Assembly (NCBI GenBank): GCA_013239625.1 | Contig: MU054049.1 | Span: forward strand, 693,015-757,014 | Source: Lama guanicoe | Lineage: Eukaryota | DNA: 64,000 bases | Direction of reading: 5' to 3' | Shown: positions 1-56,469 of the stretch, in pieces | Position numbering within the stretch: position 1 is the stretch's first letter | Layout: every line of letters begins with the position of its first letter | Position numbers and translations under genes: made by a program | The notes under the pieces: generated by a model | The model's database searches: none | What the model was told of the DNA's origin: nothing | The model's input: the letters and a program-made list of their open reading frames with translations, nothing else

Positions 1-2539
1 CTGAAGGCCACAGTCAGGGAAGCGGGACACTGAGGAGAGGAATCCTAAAATCCTCTCTCGAGATCCACAAAGTCTGGGTAACTCCATCCAGCCTCCTCTT
101 GGCTCCAGCCTTTTCTGCTCTCCCATCTGCTGTCCCTAGGACTCTGCCATCTGCCTGTCCATCCATCCGTCCATCCATCCCTCCATGTCCGTGCCCCACC
201 CTGAGTTCTAAAGTTTAGTGGGTTTCAGAGCTGCCCAGAGAGCTAGAAACATGTAAGTCTTACCACGAGTTCCTCTGCTGAAAACCCTTTGCTGCCTCCC
301 TCCTCTCCACCCAGGATAAAACCCAAACTTGGCAGGCAGGCCGGTCCTGTCCCCGCCTCCCTCCACCAGCTTCTGGGGCGCAGAGCCCGGGCCAGGCAGA
401 GGGCAGCTGCTGCAAGGTCAGCCCGGCTCTCCATGCGGCGCCTGCAGCCAGGCAGCTCCCACATGTCTGAAGCCCTCTCCCAAGCTCCGCTCAGCCACTG
501 CCTTCCCCCTGTGCAGCCTTCCAGACCATTCTCCCAGCCCTTGAACAGGAAACACAAGTCCACAGGGCCTTGGGCGCTTCTGAGCAGAGGCGATTTTGAG
601 GAGGAGGTGACATGGGAACTGGGGTCTAAGAATGAGAAGGAGATGGGCAGGCGGGCAGGCCGGGGCTGTAAGGGGCACATGAGCAGAGACCACAAGGCAG
701 ACGTGGGTTGGGAGGGTCTGAAGGGACCCCATGGGTTGGAGAGTGGGTGTGACAGAGCATGGCTGAAGAGGCTGAGAACACAGCAGCCCCCTACCCTGGC
801 AACGATCATGGGTCCTGGTGGGCACCGACCCCATTCATGGCTCAGGGGCTCTGGGAAATGACAACTCCCCCAGAGGCCCTCCCAGCACTCAGACTGGTGA
901 GAACGCTGGGCTAAGATGGAGGTGGGGACACAGGGGGCGGGCGATGGTCAAGGACGAAGGCCGAGTCTGCACCTGCACTGGTCCGGGTGTACATCCTGGC
1001 TAAGCCATCCAGGAGTGGAGTGATCGCTCTCCTGGGCCTCAGTCTCTCCATCTACACCAGGGAAGTGATCACACCTGTCTTTAGCGGCTGCCTGGGGCCC
1101 TGCCCCCAGGCACCACCAGGCCCAGGACTGACTCCACATTCCCTACACGGCTTTGTGGAGCCTTCTTCAGACCTTCTTCCACTCCAGGCGCAAGCTGCGC
1201 CCTCAGCACCCTTGGAGCGGAGACGCTCCGGGAGCCCCGTGGGAAAGTCTCGTCCCAGCTCAGCCTCCCGGGGCCTCCCTCCCAGTTTCCTCCCGCTGCA
1301 GGCCCCCTGCGCTCAGGCTACAGGCCTGGCCCACCACTCCCCTTGCCAGGGTCTCTCGGGCAGAGCCTGGCAGGGCCTGGAATGGCTGCACTGAACTTCC
1401 TCAGGGCCCCTGGCACGTCTCAGAGGGGAAGCCTTGCCAAGAACCAGTTCCAGTAGGTTTGTCAGATCCCTGGAAACCCAGCCAGCGTGTGGGTTCCTCG
1501 AGGTCCCAGCCCATGCTCTCCACAGAGCACCGGCTCTGCCACCAGAGAGGAAACTGGCAGAGGCTGCCTTTCCTCTGGGTAGACCTGCTGGCAGGCTCAG
1601 AGCCCGGGCCTCCTCCCCTGCCAGCTACTCCCTGGCAAAGCCCGGCCCTTACTCCCCTCTCTCCAGAATCCCAGGCAGGGACAGGAAGGCTCAGGCCCTG
1701 CACTCAGCTGACTCAGATCCCTGTCCTGGGTGACCTTGGACACAGTCCTCAACCTCTCTGAGCCTCAGTGTCTGCCACTTCACAGGGCTGTGTGCAGCTG
1801 CAGGAGAGCCTACAGCACCAGGCACGAAGAAGCTGGTACCAGGAGAGCCGGGTCAGGGCTCTACCTGCCCCCAGACCCCAGCAGAAAAGGGAGGCAGCTG
1901 GGATTCCCTCTTGGAGCTGAACCCCGAGAGGAGACCTCAGGCCTTCTCTGGCCATACTAGGGCCCTCTCCGGTTGGGGGAAGGGGCACATAGTCAGAAAA
2001 GAGATACATGAGGAAAATAATTCCTAAATTCTCTCCAGAGAGTCACACTTTGGGTAAGCCCCGCCTGTGCTCTACTCCTCTCCCCAGGGCACTTGCCATC
2101 CTCCCTGCATCCACCCCGCGGTTTGTGAATCCGCGGTCCATCACCCCCGAGCTTGTGCCGACATGCACCGGCCTCCTCTCGGTACCGCAGAGCTCTCCTC
2201 CACAGCTGTAACCAATTGGCTGGGCTGTGCCCAAGCCTCACCAACCAACAGGCTGAAATCGGCCCAGGAGAGAAATACAGAGAGAGGCAAACATCGTGGG
2301 GTGGGAGGTGGGGGTCCTGCTCAGAGAAGAAGGAATCCCTACCCTTCCGGTGTTAGCCAGCCCCAACCCAGGCACGGGGCCCTCCTGAGGCCCAAAGAGT
2401 CAAACGTGGGCTGAGCACTGGGCTTGGAGTCCTTAACCCAGAGCTGGCATCCTGCCTGGTCCCCTCAGCAGTGGCGGAGGAGGCGGGGTGTGTGTGTGGG
2501 GGTGATCCTCTGCAAGTTCCGGCGCCCCTAAAGCCTGGG

Positions 2540-3140
2540 TTCTTCATCCTTGCACGTGGGATGCCCACCCACCCCGCGGGAGTCAGGAGGAGGCGTCCCA
2601 GCTCTGCCCCTTCCCCTCAATACGCGCACCCGCTCCGCGAGTCCGGCGACCGGTCTGGAGGCCGATCGCCCGGCAACCCCCGGGCGCCCCGCGATTGGCC
2701 GGCGCAGCGCGGTCCTCGCCCCGCGTGCGCGGGCCCCGGGCTCGAGCGCGCTCTCGGGCCCGGGACACCGCTCCGGCGCGGCTTCTCGGGGCGCCAGCCC
2801 CCCCTCCCGCGCTTCCTGGCGCGGCGGGCACGCAGCAGGCGGGCAGGCGGCAGGGCGGCCGCGGGCAGGCGCGGCACCCGGAGGAGGCCCGCGCGGCCGG
2901 CATCAGGCCCATGGCGCGCCCGGGCGCGGCGGCGCGGCGGCGGCAGGAATGCCCGGCACGCGCGCAGGTAGCGTCTTGCCCGCCGCCGGCCCGCCCGCCC
3001 GCCCCGGGCCCGGACCCGGACCCCGGAGCGAGCGCGGGAGGGAGGGCCCGGGACCGGCGAGTTCCTGGAATGCGGGTCTGGAGGTGGCCCCCGTGGTTCT
3101 CCCGTTTCAGACCTCCGACCCCCTTGTTCCTAACGCGCGA
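2540..3140. promoter_or_regulatory. Intragenic CpG island (intron downstream of the PH-remnant exon)
   Basis: Dense CpG/GC; reverse CCAAT (ATTGG ~2694-2698); GC boxes (CCCGCCC ~2990-3000). Confidence 0.85.
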
Positions 3141-3439
3141 TGTTACAGGCACCCTAAGAAAACCATCAACTCCCAATGACCCGCCCCTTCTTGCTGGTCA
3201 AGGACTCGCTTTAGGAGCTTCCGCTCCCCGCAGAATGGGAAGCAGGTGTTCCAGGTGGAGGCAGTGGAGGCTCAGGGAGGTCAGGTGACTCGTCTGGGTT
3301 TTCCTACAGCTGGGCCGCGGGCCGCGGAGCTGGCGTTCAGGGCTCCAGCTCTCTGCCCGGCTGGGGGCCAGCGCACTCTCGGTGCCAGGGAGGGTGCTTA
3401 GGACTGAACATTCCTGTCTTCTGCAGCCCTGAGCAGTGC

Positions 3440-3560
3440 GAGCATTAATGTCCCCATTTTACAGATGAGACAGCTGAAGCTCAGAGAGGTTACGTAATTT
3501 TCCTAAGGCCACGAAACTAGTAAGTGACAGCTTCAATTCAAACCTACTTTAGCTTTTCTG
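3440..3560 (-). mobile_element. MIR SINE (representative; others at ~1715, 8300, 16800, 21800, 29880, 34470, 47030, 48820, 49980, 50400, 52900, 59620, 62420)
   Basis: MIR core CCCCATTTTACAGATGAGACAGCTGAAGCTCAGAGAGGTT. Confidence 0.75.
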
Positions 3561-14014: not shown

Positions 14015-14062
14015 CTGGAGACAAGGGTTCTAGAGGGTGAGCATGCGAGCTACGGGCAGTAC
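14015..14062 (-). CDS. ARHGAP22: In-frame 48-nt exon extension via alternative 5' splice site (adds ~[16 protein letters not shown])
   Basis: Open frame continues to a second donor CAG|GTAATC (GT 14014-14013), same phase 1; peptide matches my recollection of the insert in the longer human isoform. Confidence 0.85.
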
Positions 14063-14191
14063 CTCCGCCAAGCGGGGCCCAGATGACCCGGCGGATGGCC
14101 TGCACCCAGTCCTCCATGTCCCGCTGGGAGCTGGCCATGAGCAGGAGCGCCTCGGGGTTGGCCGGCACCTTCTCCCTCTCCCCGGCTCCAC
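14063..14191 (-). CDS. ARHGAP22: ARHGAP22 internal coding exon (C-terminal strand and helix of PH domain), 129 nt, phase 1-1
   Basis: Translates (G)[42 protein letters not shown], recognised as ARHGAP22. Acceptor TCTCCCTGTCTTGCAG|G (AG 14193-14192); donor GAG|GTACTG (GT 14062-14061). Confidence 0.95.
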
Positions 14192-21124: not shown

Positions 21125-21176
21125 CCCTGGGCAGACGCCTGCTCCTCTTCAGATGCCTGGCGAGGCAGAAAGGCAT
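21125..21176 (-). CDS. ARHGAP22: ARHGAP22 alternative first coding exon: MPFCLARHLKRSRRLPR(G)
   Basis: ACC-ATG at 21176, 52 nt open, consensus donor GGG|GTAAGT (21124-21119), phase 1 matches exon at 14191. Resembles my recollection of the N-terminus of a short human isoform. Confidence 0.8.
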
Positions 21177-43900: not shown

Positions 43901-46196
43901 GGGTCACAGTCCAAAGCAGCATTTCTCAAAGTGTGTTCAAAGATGTGCTTGCTGGAAGATGCTCGATGAAAGGCGAGTTGCCAGGGACTGTATCTACCGT
44001 CCACCTGATTTGGAGTTGCACCGATGTGTTGGAAGCTCTGAGAAGTCTTGCAGTGAAAAACTTTCCAAACTTCGATAACTCATCATTTCTAAGTTTATGA
44101 CCAAGGGAAACGTGCCCCCTGCTTGTAGCAGTACCAATTTGGAACAATGGTCCAAACTGTCTCCTGCCTAGCCAGACTGGCCACATGGCTTCAGATGTGT
44201 TAAATGAGGCGACGACATTTAAACATTTGAAGATTTTACATCAAAAACTAAATGTCTGCCTTCCTTGAACTGCAGACCAACCTTCCTGCCTGCCAGTGGC
44301 TGGCTGCCCGCTCTGGACAGGGCAGGCTTACTCTGACACCACAATGCTCCCCAGCCCCTCCTGCTCCAGGCTTGATCAGCTCTGCTAATCTACATGGGCT
44401 TTGGGAATTTGTGGGCCCTTCAGACTGGGTCCCTGTTCACAGGCTGCTGTGGCCAGCTGTGCCTTAGGATGCGTGGCAGGATGGGGGGCAAACTGGGAAA
44501 AATTCCTACACCAGGCCTGGTCATTACCTGGATCGGTATAGCCTGGGGTCCCCAGCCTGGCAGGCGATGACCCCGCCTCCCTTCCAGGCCTGTCAGTTGA
44601 GTCCTCCCTAATCAAGGCCTTGCAAATCCACCCTTACTTCTGGGACTCTGGCTCCAACTCCCTGCAGGGTTTACTGAGAAATGGTCAGGAAAGATGAAAG
44701 CTGCAGCCAGCCCCCAAGTGAAATCCTTCCTGCTCTGCTCTGGGCTCTGGGCTGCCCTCGGCCAGGATGCAGCTGGACCCTACCCTCTGAATCTTATTGT
44801 AGCCCTGGCCACTGTGACAGCCAAGACATGCTGGCCCTCGGTCTCCTCCCTCCAAACATGAAGCCCCACATGCAAAATTCTTTTTTAAATCCAAGCTAGG
44901 AAAACTGTTGCTCTGGAGTAATGAAAACCATGTAACTATTCATATTTGGTTTTAGCTGCAAAAAGACTCAACCATAAACACTATCTTACAGTCAGACTAA
45001 CTCAGTTCTCTTTGCTCTATACGACCTGTTTAAACGTAGGATCCAATTTAGTTGTGTTATGTTTATTACACATGTTATAAGCTACCTCAAACCCTTTGCG
45101 AAACTAACCTGTGTATTTGTGCCATCCTTAACGTCACCTGGACAAGAATCCTTCAAGCTGTTTGACACATTTACACCTTTATCAGACCTTTCCAGGATAT
45201 ACTTTTCAAGGAGCCGGAGCCTGGCGCCCATCCTGGTAAAGCCTGGCTGACCATTCGGTTTACAGGCAAGGCTTCCCAGACGCACGTTGTCATAACAGTC
45301 CCTAGTGAAGTCCTTAAACACACAACCTCACAGGCTCTTCCCCAGAGCCTAGCCAGAAAGGTCAGGGTGGGGCCCGGGAATCTGCATGTTTAACAAGAAG
45401 TGGGTGCAGGGCACGTGGGTTTTAGGTTCCGGCGAGTTTAGGGAGCGCTGCAGTAAAGGGTTGTATCACTATGTTTCTGACAATCAACAGGGATCGTTTC
45501 AGGCAGTTAAGGGTTAAACTGGAAGGGCCACGGCCCAAAGGAGGCCGGACCTCAGGCTGCCGCCAACGGCTTCAGCGCGTTTCTCGGCTCGGAGCCCTCT
45601 CCAAGCCCGCCGCATTCCACAAGCAGCTCCCCTTGAGGTTCTGCCACGACTTTTGGAAAACTCTGAGTCGGGGCCCCTGGGTCCAAGTTAGTGACAGAGG
45701 CAGGCGAAGAGAATGAATGGCCCCGCTCCGAGGCGGTTAAGCCGCAGAGGCGGCGCCGGGCGCAGGCCAGGCTCCCTCTGCAGAGGACCTGCGGGCGGGG
45801 CCGGGCGCCGGGGTCTCCGCCGCCCCAACCTTGGACTTGGTGGACCCGCGGCCAGCACTCCCCGTCCGCTCCGGGCCCCGGAGGGCGGGCGCTCCCCTCC
45901 GTTCGGCTCCCCTCCCACCCCGGAGCCGGACCCTAACCCCCATCCGGGCTCCGCGGAGCAAGAGGAGCCCCTGGACGCGCGCGCTGCAAAGTTCGGAGAC
46001 TCTGGGGGAGTTGTAGCCACATCTGAGCCCTTTCCAAGGCGGGGGCAGATGTCGGGTGGCCCAGGGGAACCGGCGACCAGTCCCCGATGCGGGGCTGGCA
46101 GCCCCCAGTGGCGGCTGGAGGGAGCCGGCGGGACGCGCGCCGCGCGGGAGCGCAGAGGTCCCGAGCCTGCGGCGCACGTGCGCGCCCGAGAGTTAC

Positions 46197-46248
46197 CTTT
46201 GGGCGCTCGCAGGTGTCCCCTCCAGTCTTTGCAGCAGCACAGCCCCAT
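46197..46248 (-). CDS. ARHGAP22: ARHGAP22 candidate alternative first coding exon: MGLCCCKDWRGHLRAPK(G)
   Basis: Strong Kozak GCCATGG (ATG 46248-46246) inside a CpG island, 52 nt open, donor AAG|GTAACT (46196-46191), phase 1, in frame with exon at 14191. Confidence 0.72.
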
Positions 46249-46615
46249 GGCAGCGGCCCGCGCCCGCCGCTCGCCTCCAATGCCTGACACACCGCCTGCT
46301 GCCCGTGCCCCCGGAGCGGCGCGGCCAAGGTCTGGCCTCCGGGCAGTGCCCAGCCTGGCGCGGGGCTGCGCGCGTGGCCACCGGCCCGGCCGGTCCCTTC
46401 CCCTCACTCTCCGTCCGGGTCCCGCGCCTCGGGCATCCCGGCCTCCGGGCAGACCCTGCTAATCAATAGGAGAACGCGCAGATCGCGCCGGCCGCGCCGC
46501 CAGCCCGCTTTTATCTCCGCGCGCCGGGGCGGCCCCGCGCCGGCTCCCTGCCCTCGCGGGCGCCCTCCCCGCGGCCCGTTACTCTCCTGGGGCGCCGAGC
46601 TGCGCGCTCGCGACG

Positions 46616-46633
46616 GGCCGCCAGGGGGCGCTG
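46616..46633 (+). promoter_or_regulatory. CTCF binding motif
   Basis: GGCCGCCAGGGGGCGCTG, essentially the CTCF core consensus. Confidence 0.75.
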
Positions 46634-48282
46634 TGCGAGAGGGCGCGGTCTGCGGCTCCCTCCCCTGCCCGCAGGGAGCTGGCTAAGTATGCCGGGCGTT
46701 GATACCAACCCACCGCAGACCAGAAGGAAAGGTCCCCTCGTGGTGCAAGTGCGGCGGCGCCCCTCCCCCAGCATCCTCTAAATAGTTACCTCTTGGGTGA
46801 CTTGGGGAGCGTCTACCAGGGCCACTCTGCTTTCAGTTTCCCAGCTCACCTGCACTCTACAACTGTGAGTTGCCCAGGCTACCCCCAAACCTGGCTGGGC
46901 TACCTATGGACTGTGTGACTTGGGGTAACCCTTCCTCCCTGAGACAACTCTCCTGAAATGTGCGGGAAAGGCCGCTTCAGATGTCATTTAGCACAAATTA
47001 AAGGTTTGATGGTATCAAGTTATTCAAACACTTCGTGCTCAGTTTCCTCATCTATCAGATGGAAAGACTAATAGAACAGCTTCATTGGATCTTTGTGGGG
47101 ATTAAATGAATACATATATATGATTTAGGACACAACTGGCATGTTGCTAAGTGCTTTGTAAGTGTGAACCATCATCATTATCAACTGTTGGTGAGGATTT
47201 GGGCAAATGGACACTTTTGCCAGAAGAGTTTGTTTTGGTGCAATCACTTTGGAAGCTAATGTTCATTTGCTCTGCTTATTAAAACAAAAAAATGCTAATA
47301 CCCTGGGACCAAGCAATTTCATTTCTCAGCATGCACTCAGCCCCAACCCCTAGGAAAACCTCTACTAGGCTTTTCATTGCAGCCTTGTTTGTAACTGCAA
47401 AAATTGAAACCAACAGGATGATCAGCAGTCAAGGGGTCATCAAATACACTGGCATTTTCATAAAACGAAATACTGTATCAAAGGAGGGAGATGCAGCTGA
47501 ATGTTTAAGATCTGTGGATTCATAGCACTGATGTAAAGCACACACCCTAAGAATTATTACTATACTATGTAATACCCACTCTATGCTGGGTACTGCTCTA
47601 GGCACTGGGTCTAGAAAAACACTCGGGAAGAAAAAACAGCAAATCTAGAGTGGTTCCCTCTAGGGAGACGGTGAGTGACAAGAGTGGATTGAAAGTGGGT
47701 GTCGAGGGAATTTAGCGTTCTTATAGTGGTCTAATTTCTTTAAAGGAAGGTATATTTACATGTTATTGTGTAATTAATCTAATGAGAGAAATTATTTCAA
47801 CTATCTGGCAGAGTAGGCTTCTTAATACTAGATTCTCTCTCACCCCTCCAGCTCCTAGGGTCTGTTCCTTCCCCTGAAACGGGGCTGTGGTCAACCTCTG
47901 ATGGCCTTGGCTGGGCTGGCATTTTCTCCTTCCCTTCCAACCCCCATCCCATCTTGAGAACACAGAGGCAGTCGGGAAGAAGAGCAGAGGCGAGGCCAGG
48001 CCAGAGGCAGAGGCTGCCAGCGGCATGGAGAAGAGTTAATGGTGGGGGTGCGGGAGGCAGGGAAAGAGAGGAAAGAATAACTTGGAACAGGGAAGAGGTT
48101 TTCCCAGGAGTTAAGTCTCATTCAAAGAGGAGATTAACACCAGTGGGACAGATTTCTGCCTCCCTCTAACTGTCCAGAAAGACCAGGATGAGGCTTCTTC
48201 AGGGAGAGAGGAGGCTTGTCCTGCACCCGATCCAGCAAGAAAGATATTTTCATTTCATGACATGTAGGCGGGGGTTACAAAA

Positions 48283-53900: not shown

Positions 53901-55515
53901 GCTCAGAGGTGCTGTGAGGGGCAGCTGGGCTATCTGACGCCCAAGACTGCATTTTGCCTCTGTGCTTACTACCTTGGCTGCAAGTGATGCCAAAGCCGTC
54001 TGACTTGAATTCCGACTTCCATCATCTTGAAAGACCCTCAGTCCTTCAATGAGGCAGTGGATGGGGCCAGAGGTGCTGAAGGGCTGTGAGGCTTTACTGG
54101 GACACTAAGTGCCCAGCGGCCTTCCGTTTCTTCACAGAGCTGCAGCCAAGGCTGCTGGGCAGGGTCGGGGGGAGGTGGGACTGGGAGAATTTCAGCCCAG
54201 AGGAGAGAGGCGGGGATGGTAGAGTCCACAGAAAGGGGTTCAAGTCCTTGTGCTTGCTGCTGCCACCTAGTTGTGGAAGGAGAAAGCGCAGGGCAGCCCA
54301 GCTTCTCATTTCTGGTTCTGGTGGGCAACTGTCCAGGCCACTTTTGTCCCATCCTGATGCCTATCAAGTTTCTTAGCTGATGCTGGCCTTGGCCAAGTGT
54401 CTAAAGCGTAGATGCTAGGATGGGTGAGGTCCCTGTTCCCTGGGGTTTTGCTGTGGAAGCAACAACTCCTCCAGGGTGTTCTCCCCAGGCCTCAGCATTC
54501 CGTCTGTCTGGAGGGCTCCCTGCCTGGTAAGGCAGGGCCTCTGGGGTATGACTGTGGACTCCCTTATAGACCACTCCCACAGGGCGCCAGGCGGCCCCAG
54601 GATGGTCAGGGCATGGGGCGGGCCCCTCCCAAGCTGGCCATGGTGGCCGCCACGGGATTACAGCTGTGTAGGAAAGGGCTGCTGGGTGCCACAGTGATAC
54701 CCCATGGGGAGGGAGTGGGCGACCGAGTTTCTGCAGGGATACACAGCATCTCTGGCACATGACCTCCTGCGTGGGGAGAAGGCCCACAAGCTCCTTGTGT
54801 TCCATGCTGTCAGATCACACACACACACATACACAAAAACACACACACACACGATTTCTATGGAAAGCTGGCCTCAGATGGCCCCATCAGACCCAGTTCA
54901 GTATCTGGTAAGTCCCCACGACCATCATTTCTCACCCCCCTAGTTACTCAGTACCAGGCAGAGCTCACTAACCCCAGGGCCTTTATTTCCAGGGCCACTT
55001 CTCCCTCCCTGCAGCCAGGCCTTGGTACCTCCTCAACACCAAACCCTAAGAAGCATTTTTCCAACTGTGGACTCCAACTGAAGTCATGACGTCAACTCAG
55101 TGGGTCTTGGCCAATAAATATTTTGTAAAATGAGGCAGAATCTCCGAGAATAGAAAATGCCATTGGCCCTGCATACAGGAACAGTATGTTTCTGTGAGAC
55201 CCTTGCTCCCGTGTGTGCCTGGGCCCTCGGGTGGGATGGCGTGTCTACTTCTTGTTGTCAAAAAAGTGTGAAAACACTATGGTGGTTGGTGTATCCAGCT
55301 CATCTCATTCCTTCCAGAAAACTTGGGCTCTTTGTACCAATTAGTCGACACGTTTCTCTTCCTCTCCAACTCTCCCGACAGAGTCCCCGTCTGCTGCGGG
55401 CCAAAGAAAGGGCACAAAATCTCTGCCAAACCACTCAAAAATACAAAACACCCCCCCACCGCCCCACCCCCAGCCACGAGAGGTCCCGTTAAGCACTGAT
55501 CCCAGGACGCGGGCT

Positions 55516-55829
55516 GCTTACTGGCCTGGCATTTGCGTATCGAAGAGGGCCACTTAAGTGACCCTTCACAGAACAAAGAAGATCAGCCTCTCTCAATTTA
55601 AAAGAAAAGAAAACCCTCCTCGCAGCCGCACATTCTTTCAGTGGAGGCTCCCGCACGGCGGGCTGGACCGGCCGCACTTTGGTCTGACTCATCCGGTGGG
55701 TTGCTCGTTCCCTCTCCAGCATCATTCCTGAGACAGTTATTTCTGGAGCGCCTCTCTGTGCCAGACACGGGAAACCGAAGACCAGAGCCCCCTGTCCGAC
55801 GCCCCTTCTCTGCGTGCGTGCGTGCGTGC

Positions 55830-55860
<31 letters not shown>

Positions 55861-55900
55861 ATGAAGACGCCCGCTCCCCCTCCCTCTCCAAGCCCGTCCT
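55516..55900 (-). promoter_or_regulatory. Candidate promoter / non-coding first exon or enhancer
   Basis: Locally CpG-enriched unique sequence; AP-1 TGACTCA 55685-55691; TEAD CATTCC 55723-55728; donor CCA|GTAAGC (55521-55516); upstream (TGCG)n(TG)n. Confidence 0.45.
55811..55860. repeat. Compound (TGCG)n(TG)n microsatellite, Z-DNA prone
   Basis: 50 bp of uninterrupted purine-pyrimidine alternation. Confidence 0.95.
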
Positions 55901-56469
55901 CCCAGAGGGAGGCACCGCCCACTGCTGGTGCGTTCTGGCCCCACCTGCCCCAGCTCAACCCCAGCTCTCCAGGATGCCGGGATTCTCATCATGCTTGCCC
56001 TGGGGTGGGAGGGGCCCCTCACGCATATGAGCATCTATTAGGTTCCAGGCGCTGCTGTATTCTGCATCCTTGCCAAGGCCCATGAAGATCATTACGATCC
56101 CCATTCAATAAGGCTCAGGAGAGAGGTGACTTGGCAAGGCGTGCGCACGGCCGGGATGCAGCCAGTCCTTTCCTGGGATCTGGGACTCCTGAGGCTCTGT
56201 TCTTCCCGCTCAACCACAGGCAGCACTTGGAAGTGACCAGGTGGTGCCACAGGCGGAGCAGATGATGGGGCCATAGCTTGGGTAACAAGCCTCACAGATG
56301 GAAGGGCTGTGCAGGAAGGTGAGGGGCCCTCAGGGGGGAGGAGGGGAGGAAGGGAAGCCAGGACTTCCGGGTTTGGGGCCTTAAGAGTGTGGGCTGGATT
56401 CTCCAGGCCAATGAAAGTTGGTCCTGCTGCGAAGAGCCTGTGGCTCTGGACATTTCACCCATAATTGCA

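What the first reader, a model, noticed from the sequence alone, without database searches (positions are those of the whole stretch)
46191..46253. CpG-island first exon encoding a myristoyl/palmitoyl anchor (MGLCCCK) that would replace the ARHGAP22 PH domain
Seen: minus strand GCTGCC-ATG-GGG-CTG-TGC-TGC-TGC-AAA-GAC-TGG-AGG-GGA-CAC-CTG-CGA-GCG-CCC-AAA-G|GTAACT, i.e. a strong Kozak, 17 codons and a phase-1 donor. It joins the exon at 14191 in frame, giving [31 protein letters not shown]. Established: Gly2 with a small residue at position 6 and Lys7 fits the N-myristoyltransferase consensus, and adjacent cysteines are typical S-palmitoylation sites, as in SH4-type dual acylation. The exon at 14191 supplies only the last strand and helix of the PH domain. 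Inference: this promoter makes a PH-less, constitutively membrane-anchored Rac-GAP isoform. I cannot tell whether it is already annotated.
Basis: partly seen in the sequence, partly recalled or inferred. Interest (0 to 1): 0.85.

Follow-up and report, generated by a model that had tools for sequence, protein, structure and literature searches.

The report
Annotated ARHGAP22 first exon, likely lipid anchor
This is a real and already annotated alternative first exon of the Rac-inactivating gene ARHGAP22. It swaps the membrane-binding PH domain for a 17-residue tail whose first residues (Met-Gly-x-x-Cys-Cys-Lys/Arg) are kept from fish to mammals and look like a fatty-acid membrane anchor, though nobody has yet shown that lipid is attached.

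Summary
On the minus strand, ATG 46248 opens 17 codons (MGLCCCKDWRGHLRAPK) in a CpG island. They end at a phase-1 donor (46197|GT) and join exon 14191-14063 in frame.

It is not new as a gene model. Eighty-four fetched database proteins start MG[LV]CCC joined to the same next exon (a few skip it). They include human TrEMBL A6NJ38, chimpanzee "isoform 4" and rat and mouse "isoform 3". A PH-less ARHGAP22 isoform, p68RacGAP, was published in 2004, and the 609-622 aa forms weigh 67-68 kDa.

Two things are added here:
- Frog (MGLCCCRDR...) and 25 teleost clusters (MGPVCCKPD...) have the same 17-codon, phase-1 exon.
- Residues 1-8 are conserved about as well as the RhoGAP domain. Residues 9-17 are not conserved at all.

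The window's peptide fits the N-myristoylation pattern and resembles the Fyn SH4 motif. Most teleosts carry Pro3, which breaks that pattern, so the Cys-Cys-Lys/Arg palmitoylation core is the safest inference.

No searchable paper links ARHGAP22 to acylation. Lipidation, membrane anchoring and use of the exon in this species remain inferred.

The parts
45401..47000 (.). CpG island holding the alternative promoter and first exon
   Evidence: 1600 bp, GC 0.687, CpG observed/expected 0.81; the 46001-47000 bin has GC 0.699.
46509..46514 (-). TATA-like ATAAAA. It would place a transcription start near 46475-46485. This is inferred, not shown.
   Evidence: Read directly (gcggagATAAAAgcgggc). No 5'-end data were obtainable.
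46404..46436 (-). Possible 10-codon upstream ORF (MPEARDPDGE) in the 5' UTR, out of frame with the main ORF and in a weak initiation context
46197..46248 (-). Coding part of alternative first exon E1a: ATG plus 16 codons plus 1 base. It encodes MGLCCCKDWRGHLRAPK.
   Evidence: 100% tblastn match to the annotated isoforms P0133 and P0167.
46191..46196 (-). Phase-1 splice donor GTAACT. With the exon end AAG it matches 8 of 9 consensus positions (MAG|GTRAGT).
14063..14191 (-). Shared exon, phase 1 in and out, encoding G-GAGEREK...APLGG. It carries the last beta-strand and C-terminal helix of the PH domain.
   Evidence: Pfam PH profile positions 80-104 of 105 only.
14015..14062 (-). Optional 48-nt extension of that exon up to an alternative donor CAG|GTAATC. 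It adds [15 protein letters not shown]-type residues.
   Evidence: The same insertion is present in annotated 622-636 aa isoforms.

Best explanation
The window holds an internal CpG-island promoter of ARHGAP22 on the minus strand.

Gene structure:
- The first exon supplies a strong-context ATG and 17 codons (MGLCCCKDWRGHLRAPK).
- It splices in phase 1 to the exon at 14191. In some annotated mouse and mouse-lemur models it splices directly to the following GIFGQ exon instead.
- The product lacks the canonical N-terminus, including the Akt/14-3-3 site Ser16, and lacks nearly all of the PH domain. It keeps the RhoGAP and coiled-coil regions.

Proposed mechanism, all steps inferred:
1. The initiator Met is removed and N-myristoyltransferase acylates Gly2. 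Small Cys6 and basic Lys7 favour this.
2. The weakly membrane-bound protein is then S-palmitoylated on Cys4, Cys5 or Cys6.
3. This gives an SH4-like two-signal anchor that tethers the Rac-GAP to membranes without a PH domain and outside Akt/14-3-3 control.

The exon and its M-G-x-x-C-C-K/R core are ancestral to bony vertebrates.
For: Shown:
- The sequence and frame are as described.
- 84 fetched proteins start MG[LV]CCC. Apart from three annotated exon-skipping isoforms, they are joined to the homologous exon. They come from rodents, primates, carnivores, ungulates, bats, a hedgehog and Xenopus.
- Named examples include A6NJ38_HUMAN, Pan 'isoform 4', and rat and mouse 'isoform 3'.
- The rat 610-aa and another 631-aa form sit on Logan contigs of 2262 and 2424 nt. 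Contigs that short can only be spliced cDNA.
- 25 teleost clusters start MGPVCCKPDRLKKQHLQ|GG. Most keep the 17-residue length, and all join the same next exon.
- Identity by region:
  - Residues 1-8: 1.00 mammal-mammal, 0.88 mammal-frog, 0.65 mammal-fish.
  - Residues 9-17: 0.00 mammal-frog, 0.09 mammal-fish.
  - Linker: 0.29-0.43 for the same comparisons.
  - RhoGAP domain: 0.75-0.83 for the same comparisons.
- M1, G2, C5, C6 and K/R7 are invariant in all 109 sequences.
- The window peptide and all 84 tetrapod sequences fit the PROSITE N-myristoylation pattern (a relaxed form of the pattern is quoted in PMC1885993).
- In Fyn (SH4 motif), Gly2 and Lys7/9 are needed for efficient myristoylation, and dual acylation is needed for membrane binding (PMC2133112).
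- Ser16 and the PH domain mediate 14-3-3 binding in the canonical form (PMC3429473). Both are absent from this isoform.
- RNA-labelled runs from three studies hold 23-42% of the sampled words of 45900-46800.
Against: - No acylation, localisation or activity data exist for this N-terminus in anything I could search.
- 24 of 25 teleost orthologues have Pro at position 3, which the myristoylation pattern excludes. From my own knowledge, Pro3 also hampers removal of the initiator Met. Myristoylation may therefore not be the conserved feature.
- All anthropoid primate models with this N-terminus that were returned (535-539 aa) have a split RhoGAP match.
- p68RacGAP was reported as nuclear when co-expressed with Vezf1 (PMC4059726). 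The tag position in that experiment is unknown to me.
- Use of the donor in the window's own species was not shown, because read laying returned nothing.
Confidence: 0.68

Rival explanations
1. The anchor is palmitate only, as in GAP-43. Cys5/Cys6 (plus Cys4 in tetrapods) with the neighbouring Lys/Arg are S-acylated without prior N-myristoylation. Gly2 is conserved for another reason.
For: - The universally conserved core is C5-C6-K/R7.
- 24 of 25 teleost sequences have Pro3 and fail the myristoylation pattern.
- From my own knowledge, N-terminal Cys pairs next to basic residues are palmitoylated without myristate in GAP-43 and PSD-95.
Against: - Gly2 is invariant in 109 of 109 sequences, including the Pro3 fish.
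- All tetrapod sequences fit the myristoylation pattern, with Lys/Arg7 as in Fyn and Src (PMC2133112).
Confidence: 0.17
2. The exon is real and coding but its N-terminus is not lipidated. The conserved MGxxCCK serves something else, such as a protein contact, metal or redox chemistry, an N-terminal glycine degron, or a constraint at the DNA or RNA level within the promoter or 5' end.
For: - No experimental lipidation data exist.
- The exon lies in a CpG island, where DNA-level constraint is possible.
- Codon-level selection could not be measured because no orthologous DNA could be fetched.
Against: - Conservation is at exactly the residues that acylation needs.
- It stops abruptly after residue 8 within the same exon.
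- It survives complete turnover of the flanking residues between fish, frog and mammals.
Confidence: 0.1
3. The transcript is mostly non-functional. Either it is promoter noise with a chance ORF, or translation really starts at a downstream Met such as MASSQRD in the next exon.
For: - Some database models start at MASSQRD (P0142, P0265).
- A short uORF may precede the ATG.
Against: - The ATG has a strong Kozak context.
- The ORF, its length and its phase are kept from teleosts to mammals.
- Spliced cDNA contigs encode it.
Confidence: 0.04

Closest known systems
Annotated ARHGAP22 isoforms starting MGLCCCK (A6NJ38_HUMAN, Pan troglodytes 'isoform 4', rat and mouse 'isoform 3', many XP_ models), and probably the published PH-less isoform p68RacGAP
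   Same: - The 17-residue N-terminus is identical and joins the same next exon.
- The 609-622 aa forms weigh 66.9-68.3 kDa, which fits 'p68'.
- p68RacGAP is described as the short isoform lacking the PH domain (PMC4059726, PMC4049857).
   Different: - Nothing differs at the sequence level. The window simply carries the genomic copy.
- I could not check that p68RacGAP has this N-terminus rather than one of the two other PH-less starts, because the 2004 JBC paper is not held.
SH4 motif of Src-family kinases, especially Fyn (myristoyl-Gly2, palmitoyl-Cys3/Cys6, Lys7/Lys9)
   Same: - Both have Gly2, a Cys at position 6 and Lys7, with cysteines close to the myristoyl-Gly. From my own knowledge, Asp8 is also shared.
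- The logic is two-signal membrane binding (PMC2133112).
   Different: - There is no Cys3. The window peptide has three consecutive Cys at positions 4-6.
- The motif is attached to a RhoGAP rather than a kinase.
- Acylation is untested.
PH-less isoforms of the paralogue ARHGAP24/FilGAP (RC-GAP73/p73RhoGAP)
   Same: A shorter isoform of a FilGAP-family Rac-GAP that lacks the PH domain and is expressed in endothelium (PMC4049857).
   Different: The ARHGAP24 short forms seen here start inside the shared exon (MTANHET...). They carry no Gly2 or Cys-cluster motif.
AKAP18-alpha/AKAP7 N-terminus (recalled from memory as MGQLCC, myristoyl-Gly plus two palmitoyl-Cys)
   Same: It has an MG-x-x-C-C arrangement like the teleost MGPVCCK and the tetrapod MGLCCC.
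   Different: It is recalled from memory only and was not checked here. It is an unrelated protein.

Membership tests
Annotated ARHGAP22 alternative-promoter isoform (MGLCCCK start) | The first-exon peptide is identical to the annotated isoforms | tested here: met
   P0133 and P0167 residues 1-18 match window 46248-46195 at 100%; 57 of 84 sequences have exactly MGLCCCKDWRGHLRAPKG.
Annotated ARHGAP22 alternative-promoter isoform (MGLCCCK start) | In-frame phase-1 junction to the GGAGEREK exon | tested here: met
   The junction was checked exon by exon.
Annotated ARHGAP22 alternative-promoter isoform (MGLCCCK start) | The exon is transcribed and the donor is used in the window's own species | tested here: inconclusive
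p68RacGAP (Aitsebaomo et al. 2004) | Same N-terminal sequence as the published cDNA | not testable with these tools
   The paper is not held. The only support is the mass match of 66.9-68.3 kDa and the description 'lacking PH domain' (PMC4059726).
N-myristoyltransferase substrates | Gly at position 2 and a fit to the pattern G-{EDRKHPFYW}-x(2)-[STAGCN]-{P} | tested here: met
   the window peptide and 84 of 84 tetrapod sequences pass. A relaxed form of the pattern is quoted in PMC1885993, which also says the pattern gives many false positives. Only 1 of 25 teleost sequences passes, because of Pro3.
N-myristoyltransferase substrates | Covalent myristate on Gly2 | not testable with these tools
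   This needs metabolic labelling or mass spectrometry. No report was found.
SH4-type dual-acylated N-termini | Cysteine(s) within a few residues of the myristoyl-Gly, conserved across species | tested here: met
   Cys4-6 are present in the window. Cys5 and Cys6 are invariant in 109 of 109 sequences from mammals, frog and teleosts.
SH4-type dual-acylated N-termini | S-palmitoylation and acylation-dependent membrane binding | not testable with these tools
   No data were found. This needs acyl-exchange or alkyne-palmitate labelling and fractionation.
PH-domain-containing ARHGAP22 (canonical) | Complete PH domain | tested here: not met
   the canonical form matches PH profile 2-104 of 105 at 83 bits. 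MGLCCCK isoforms match only profile 80-104, at 18.7-18.9 bits, below the 25.1-bit cut-off.

The most novel reading that the evidence does not exclude
ARHGAP22 has carried a lipid-anchored, PH-less isoform since the common ancestor of bony vertebrates. Its MG-x-x-C-C-K/R anchor has been overlooked. The endothelial isoform known as p68RacGAP would then be a membrane-tethered Rac-GAP that escapes Akt/14-3-3 control. Earlier localisation studies would have masked the anchor if they used N-terminal tags or artificial delta-PH constructs. A second 17-codon first exon in the window (MPFCLARHLKRSRRLPR, polybasic with one Cys) may be an alternative membrane-targeting head on the same body.
Probability: 0.45. 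Interest if true: 0.55.

Novelty: new member of a known kind. Interest (0 to 1): 0.4.

Why it matters
As a gene model this is ordinary, because the exon and its isoform are already in UniProt and RefSeq-type annotation.

What may matter is the function.
- If the conserved head is acylated, ARHGAP22 has two ways of reaching membranes, chosen by promoter. One is a regulated PH/14-3-3 form. The other is a lipid-tethered form.
- That would change how Rac inactivation in endothelium, neurons and migrating tumour cells is interpreted.
- It would also mean that N-terminally tagged constructs do not report the behaviour of the short isoform.

The fish-to-mammal conservation of only the first eight residues makes this a cheap and well-defined experiment.

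Tried and rejected
- **Read laying.** No junctions, 5' ends or depth were obtained. No letters of 45362-45397 were sent to any collection, paper or findings search afterwards.
- **The look-up of encoding contigs.** No orthologous DNA or cDNA contigs could be read, so dN/dS, promoter conservation and 5'-UTR mapping were not possible.
- **Metagenome contigs.** I chose not to scan them for the exon, because hits could be human host contamination.
- **Joined model.** The joined spliced model was never submitted. Exons were searched separately by reference, and full-length relatives were reached through database proteins.
- **Papers.** Searches for MGLCCCK and GLCCCK found nothing. Searches for ARHGAP22 with myristoyl or palmitoyl found only incidental co-mentions. 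The p68RacGAP paper is not held.
- **The search of earlier findings.** It returned nothing by place or by the word ARHGAP22.
- **Chance ORF in a CpG island.** Rejected on the annotation and conservation evidence.
- **E1a and E1b as duplicates.** I considered that the two 52-nt first-exon coding parts are duplicates. They share 25 of 52 identities, reached by 1.6% of codon shuffles. This is suggestive only.
- **Sauropsids, marsupials, afrotherians.** Not seen in the returned sets. The searches were capped and clustered, so this says nothing about absence.

Full report
**Observation**

On the minus strand the window reads GCTGCC-ATG-GGG-CTG-TGC-TGC-TGC-AAA-...-AAA-G|GTAACT.
- The ATG is at 46248-46246 and the last exon base is 46197.
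- The 17 codons translate to MGLCCCKDWRGHLRAPK.
- One base is left over, so the donor is phase 1.
- The initiation context is strong, with G at -3 and G at +4.
- An in-frame TAG lies upstream at 46461. The only other ATG in the 312 nt upstream opens a 10-codon out-of-frame uORF at 46436.
- The exon sits in a 1.6-kb CpG island at 45401-47000, with GC 0.69 and CpG observed/expected 0.81.

The proposed acceptor exon is real.
- The acceptor is ...tgttctccctgtcttgcag|G at 14191.
- The exon is 129 nt, ends at 14063 (GAG|GTACTG), and is phase 1 in and out.
- It encodes [43 protein letters not shown].

**What it is**

I searched the 42-residue exon by reference against 1.84 billion representative proteins. 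One hit, P0006 from Nannospalax (541 aa), begins MGLCCCKDWRGHLRAPKGGTGEREK.

Using that database protein as a query, and later the first 40 residues of the rat protein P0106, gave 64 clusters with this start. Counting cluster members, 84 fetched proteins begin MG[LV]CCC.

They include:
- A6NJ38_HUMAN, 539 aa.
- "ARHGAP22 isoform 4" of Pan troglodytes.
- "Isoform 3" of rat (610 aa) and of mouse (622 aa).
- D3Z1Y5_MOUSE.
- Many RefSeq XP_ models in rodents, lemurs, carnivores, pigs, whales, camels, bats and a hedgehog.

Two of them sit on Logan contigs of 2262 and 2424 nt (rat P0106 and P0194). Contigs that short can only encode 610 and 631 residues if they are spliced cDNA.

Local tblastn of these proteins against the window places residues 1-18 at 46248-46195 (100% identity). 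The next residues fall at 14192-14061.

The exon and its junction are therefore already annotated.

Exons were handled separately by reference, and full-length relatives were reached through database proteins.

**Literature**

PMC4059726 and PMC4049857 both describe p68RacGAP (Aitsebaomo et al. 2004) as a short ARHGAP22 isoform.
- It lacks the PH domain and is expressed in endothelial cells.
- It binds Vezf1.

The 609-622 aa MGLCCCK forms have calculated masses of 66.9-68.3 kDa. The two other short mouse forms weigh 61.8 and 63.1 kDa. p68RacGAP is therefore probably this isoform. I could not confirm it because the paper is not held.

**What the isoform loses**

- Pfam gives the canonical protein a full PH domain (residues 39-144, profile 2-104 of 105, 83 bits).
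- The MGLCCCK forms keep only profile positions 80-104, below the family threshold.
- The canonical N-terminus also carries Ser16, the Akt site and main 14-3-3 site. The PH domain is required for 14-3-3 binding (PMC3429473). Both are absent from this isoform.
- Some annotated mouse and mouse-lemur models join exon 1 directly to the GIFGQ exon and drop the PH remnant altogether (P0256, P0271).

**Conservation (new here)**

Xenopus tropicalis isoform X1 (XP_002940376) starts MGLCCCRDRKNLSSGDK|V....

A search with the first 60 residues of a sardine protein found 25 teleost clusters starting MGPVCCKPDRLKKQHLQ|GG.... Most keep the 17-residue length, and all join the same next exon.

Across 109 sequences, M1, G2, C5, C6 and K/R7 never vary.

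Identity by region, in an alignment of 13 full-length isoforms:

| Region | Mammal-mammal | Mammal-frog | Mammal-fish |
|---|---|---|---|
| Residues 1-8 | 1.00 | 0.88 | 0.65 |
| Residues 9-17 | 1.00 | 0.00 | 0.09 |
| Linker | 0.76 | 0.29 | 0.43 |
| RhoGAP domain | 0.96 | 0.75 | 0.83 |

Selection has therefore acted on the first eight residues only, about as strongly as on the catalytic domain. This is protein-level evidence.

**How it most likely works**

The window peptide and all 84 tetrapod sequences fit the PROSITE N-myristoylation pattern anchored at Gly2. A relaxed form of that pattern is quoted in PMC1885993, which also warns that the pattern is permissive.

The arrangement of Gly2, Cys6 and Lys7 is that of the Fyn SH4 motif; from my own knowledge, Asp8 matches as well. 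In Fyn, Gly2 and Lys7/9 are needed for efficient myristoylation. Myristate plus palmitate together give stable membrane binding (PMC2133112).

My best reading (confidence about 0.68) is as follows:
1. Gly2 is myristoylated co-translationally.
2. Cys4, Cys5 or Cys6 is then S-palmitoylated.
3. This tethers a PH-less Rac-GAP to membranes, outside Akt/14-3-3 control.

Every step of that mechanism is inferred.

The main caveat is that 24 of 25 teleost sequences have Pro3, which the pattern excludes. The universally conserved element is thus the Cys-Cys-Lys/Arg core. A palmitate-only anchor is a serious rival (about 0.17).

"Constitutive" anchoring is not supported, because S-acylation is reversible.

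The anthropoid primate models with this head (535-539 aa) also lack about 69 residues of the RhoGAP domain. Their Pfam match is split. An intact GAP from this promoter is documented in rodents, lemurs, ungulates and carnivores, but not shown for this species.

**RNA in this species**

Seven RNA-labelled runs from three studies hold 23-42% of the sampled words of 45900-46800.

This fits a first exon of roughly 200-380 nt. It also fits a start about 30 nt downstream of a TATA-like ATAAAA at 46514-46509.

**Novelty**

No paper in the searchable library contains the peptide, and none links ARHGAP22 to myristoylation or palmitoylation. Supplementary proteomic tables and UniProt feature lines could not be searched.

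- As a feature of the genome, the exon and isoform are already known.
- As a predicted lipid anchor, it would be a new member of a known kind (SH4-like or GAP-43-like acylated N-termini).
- The new supporting fact is the conservation of its core across bony vertebrates.

I rate the interest as moderate (0.4). It is a clean, cheap hypothesis for Rho-GTPase biologists, not a surprise of principle.

Noticed in passing
window 21125-21176 (minus strand): A second alternative first exon of the same design. ATG at 21176 opens 17 codons (MPFCLARHLKRSRRLPR) plus 1 base, with donor G|GTAAGT in phase 1. Pig, whale, mustelid and squirrel models join the homologous exon (MPFCPARYLKKSRRLPR...) to the same GGAGEREK exon. 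It is polybasic with one Cys, so it may be another membrane-targeting head. Its 52 coding bases share 25 identities with the MGLCCCK exon, a level reached by 1.6% of codon shuffles.
   Followed up: partly
window 2816-2912 (minus strand), in the CpG island at 2301-3500: A third alternative first exon, MGLMPAARASSGCRACPRPPCRLPACCVPAAP. It is 93% identical to rodent models (P0171, P0257, P0262) that join it to the GIFGQ exon, which lies outside the window. At the expected donor the window reads CAG|GAAGCG with no GT, so the exon may be unused or spliced differently in this species.
   Followed up: partly
window 14015-14062 (minus strand): An alternative donor CAG|GTAATC lies 48 nt downstream of the normal one. 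It adds 16 residues ([15 protein letters not shown]...), as in annotated 622-636 aa isoforms of several mammals.
   Followed up: yes
database proteins P0131, P0133, P0135-P0141, P0154, P0155, P0164 (not in the window): All anthropoid primate models with the MGLCCCK start that were returned are 535-539 aa. They lack about 69 residues in the middle of the RhoGAP domain (Pfam match split into profile 1-44 plus the rest). They look like projections of a single exon-skipping transcript. Whether an intact-GAP form exists in these species is open.
   Followed up: partly
window 46404-46436 (minus strand): A ten-codon uORF (MPEARDPDGE) would lie in the 5' UTR if transcription starts near the TATA-like ATAAAA at 46509-46514.
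   Followed up: no
window 55301-56000: A further weak CpG island (GC 0.58, observed/expected 0.67) lies upstream of the studied promoter. No ARHGAP22 coding exon was matched there by tblastn.
   Followed up: no
P0080 (Sardina pilchardus 'ARHGAP22-like', not in the window): A teleost paralogue has a different 17-residue head, MGQDCSTLTRNKTQNHQ, joined to the same exon. It has Gly2, Cys5 and Ser6 and passes the myristoylation pattern.
   Followed up: partly
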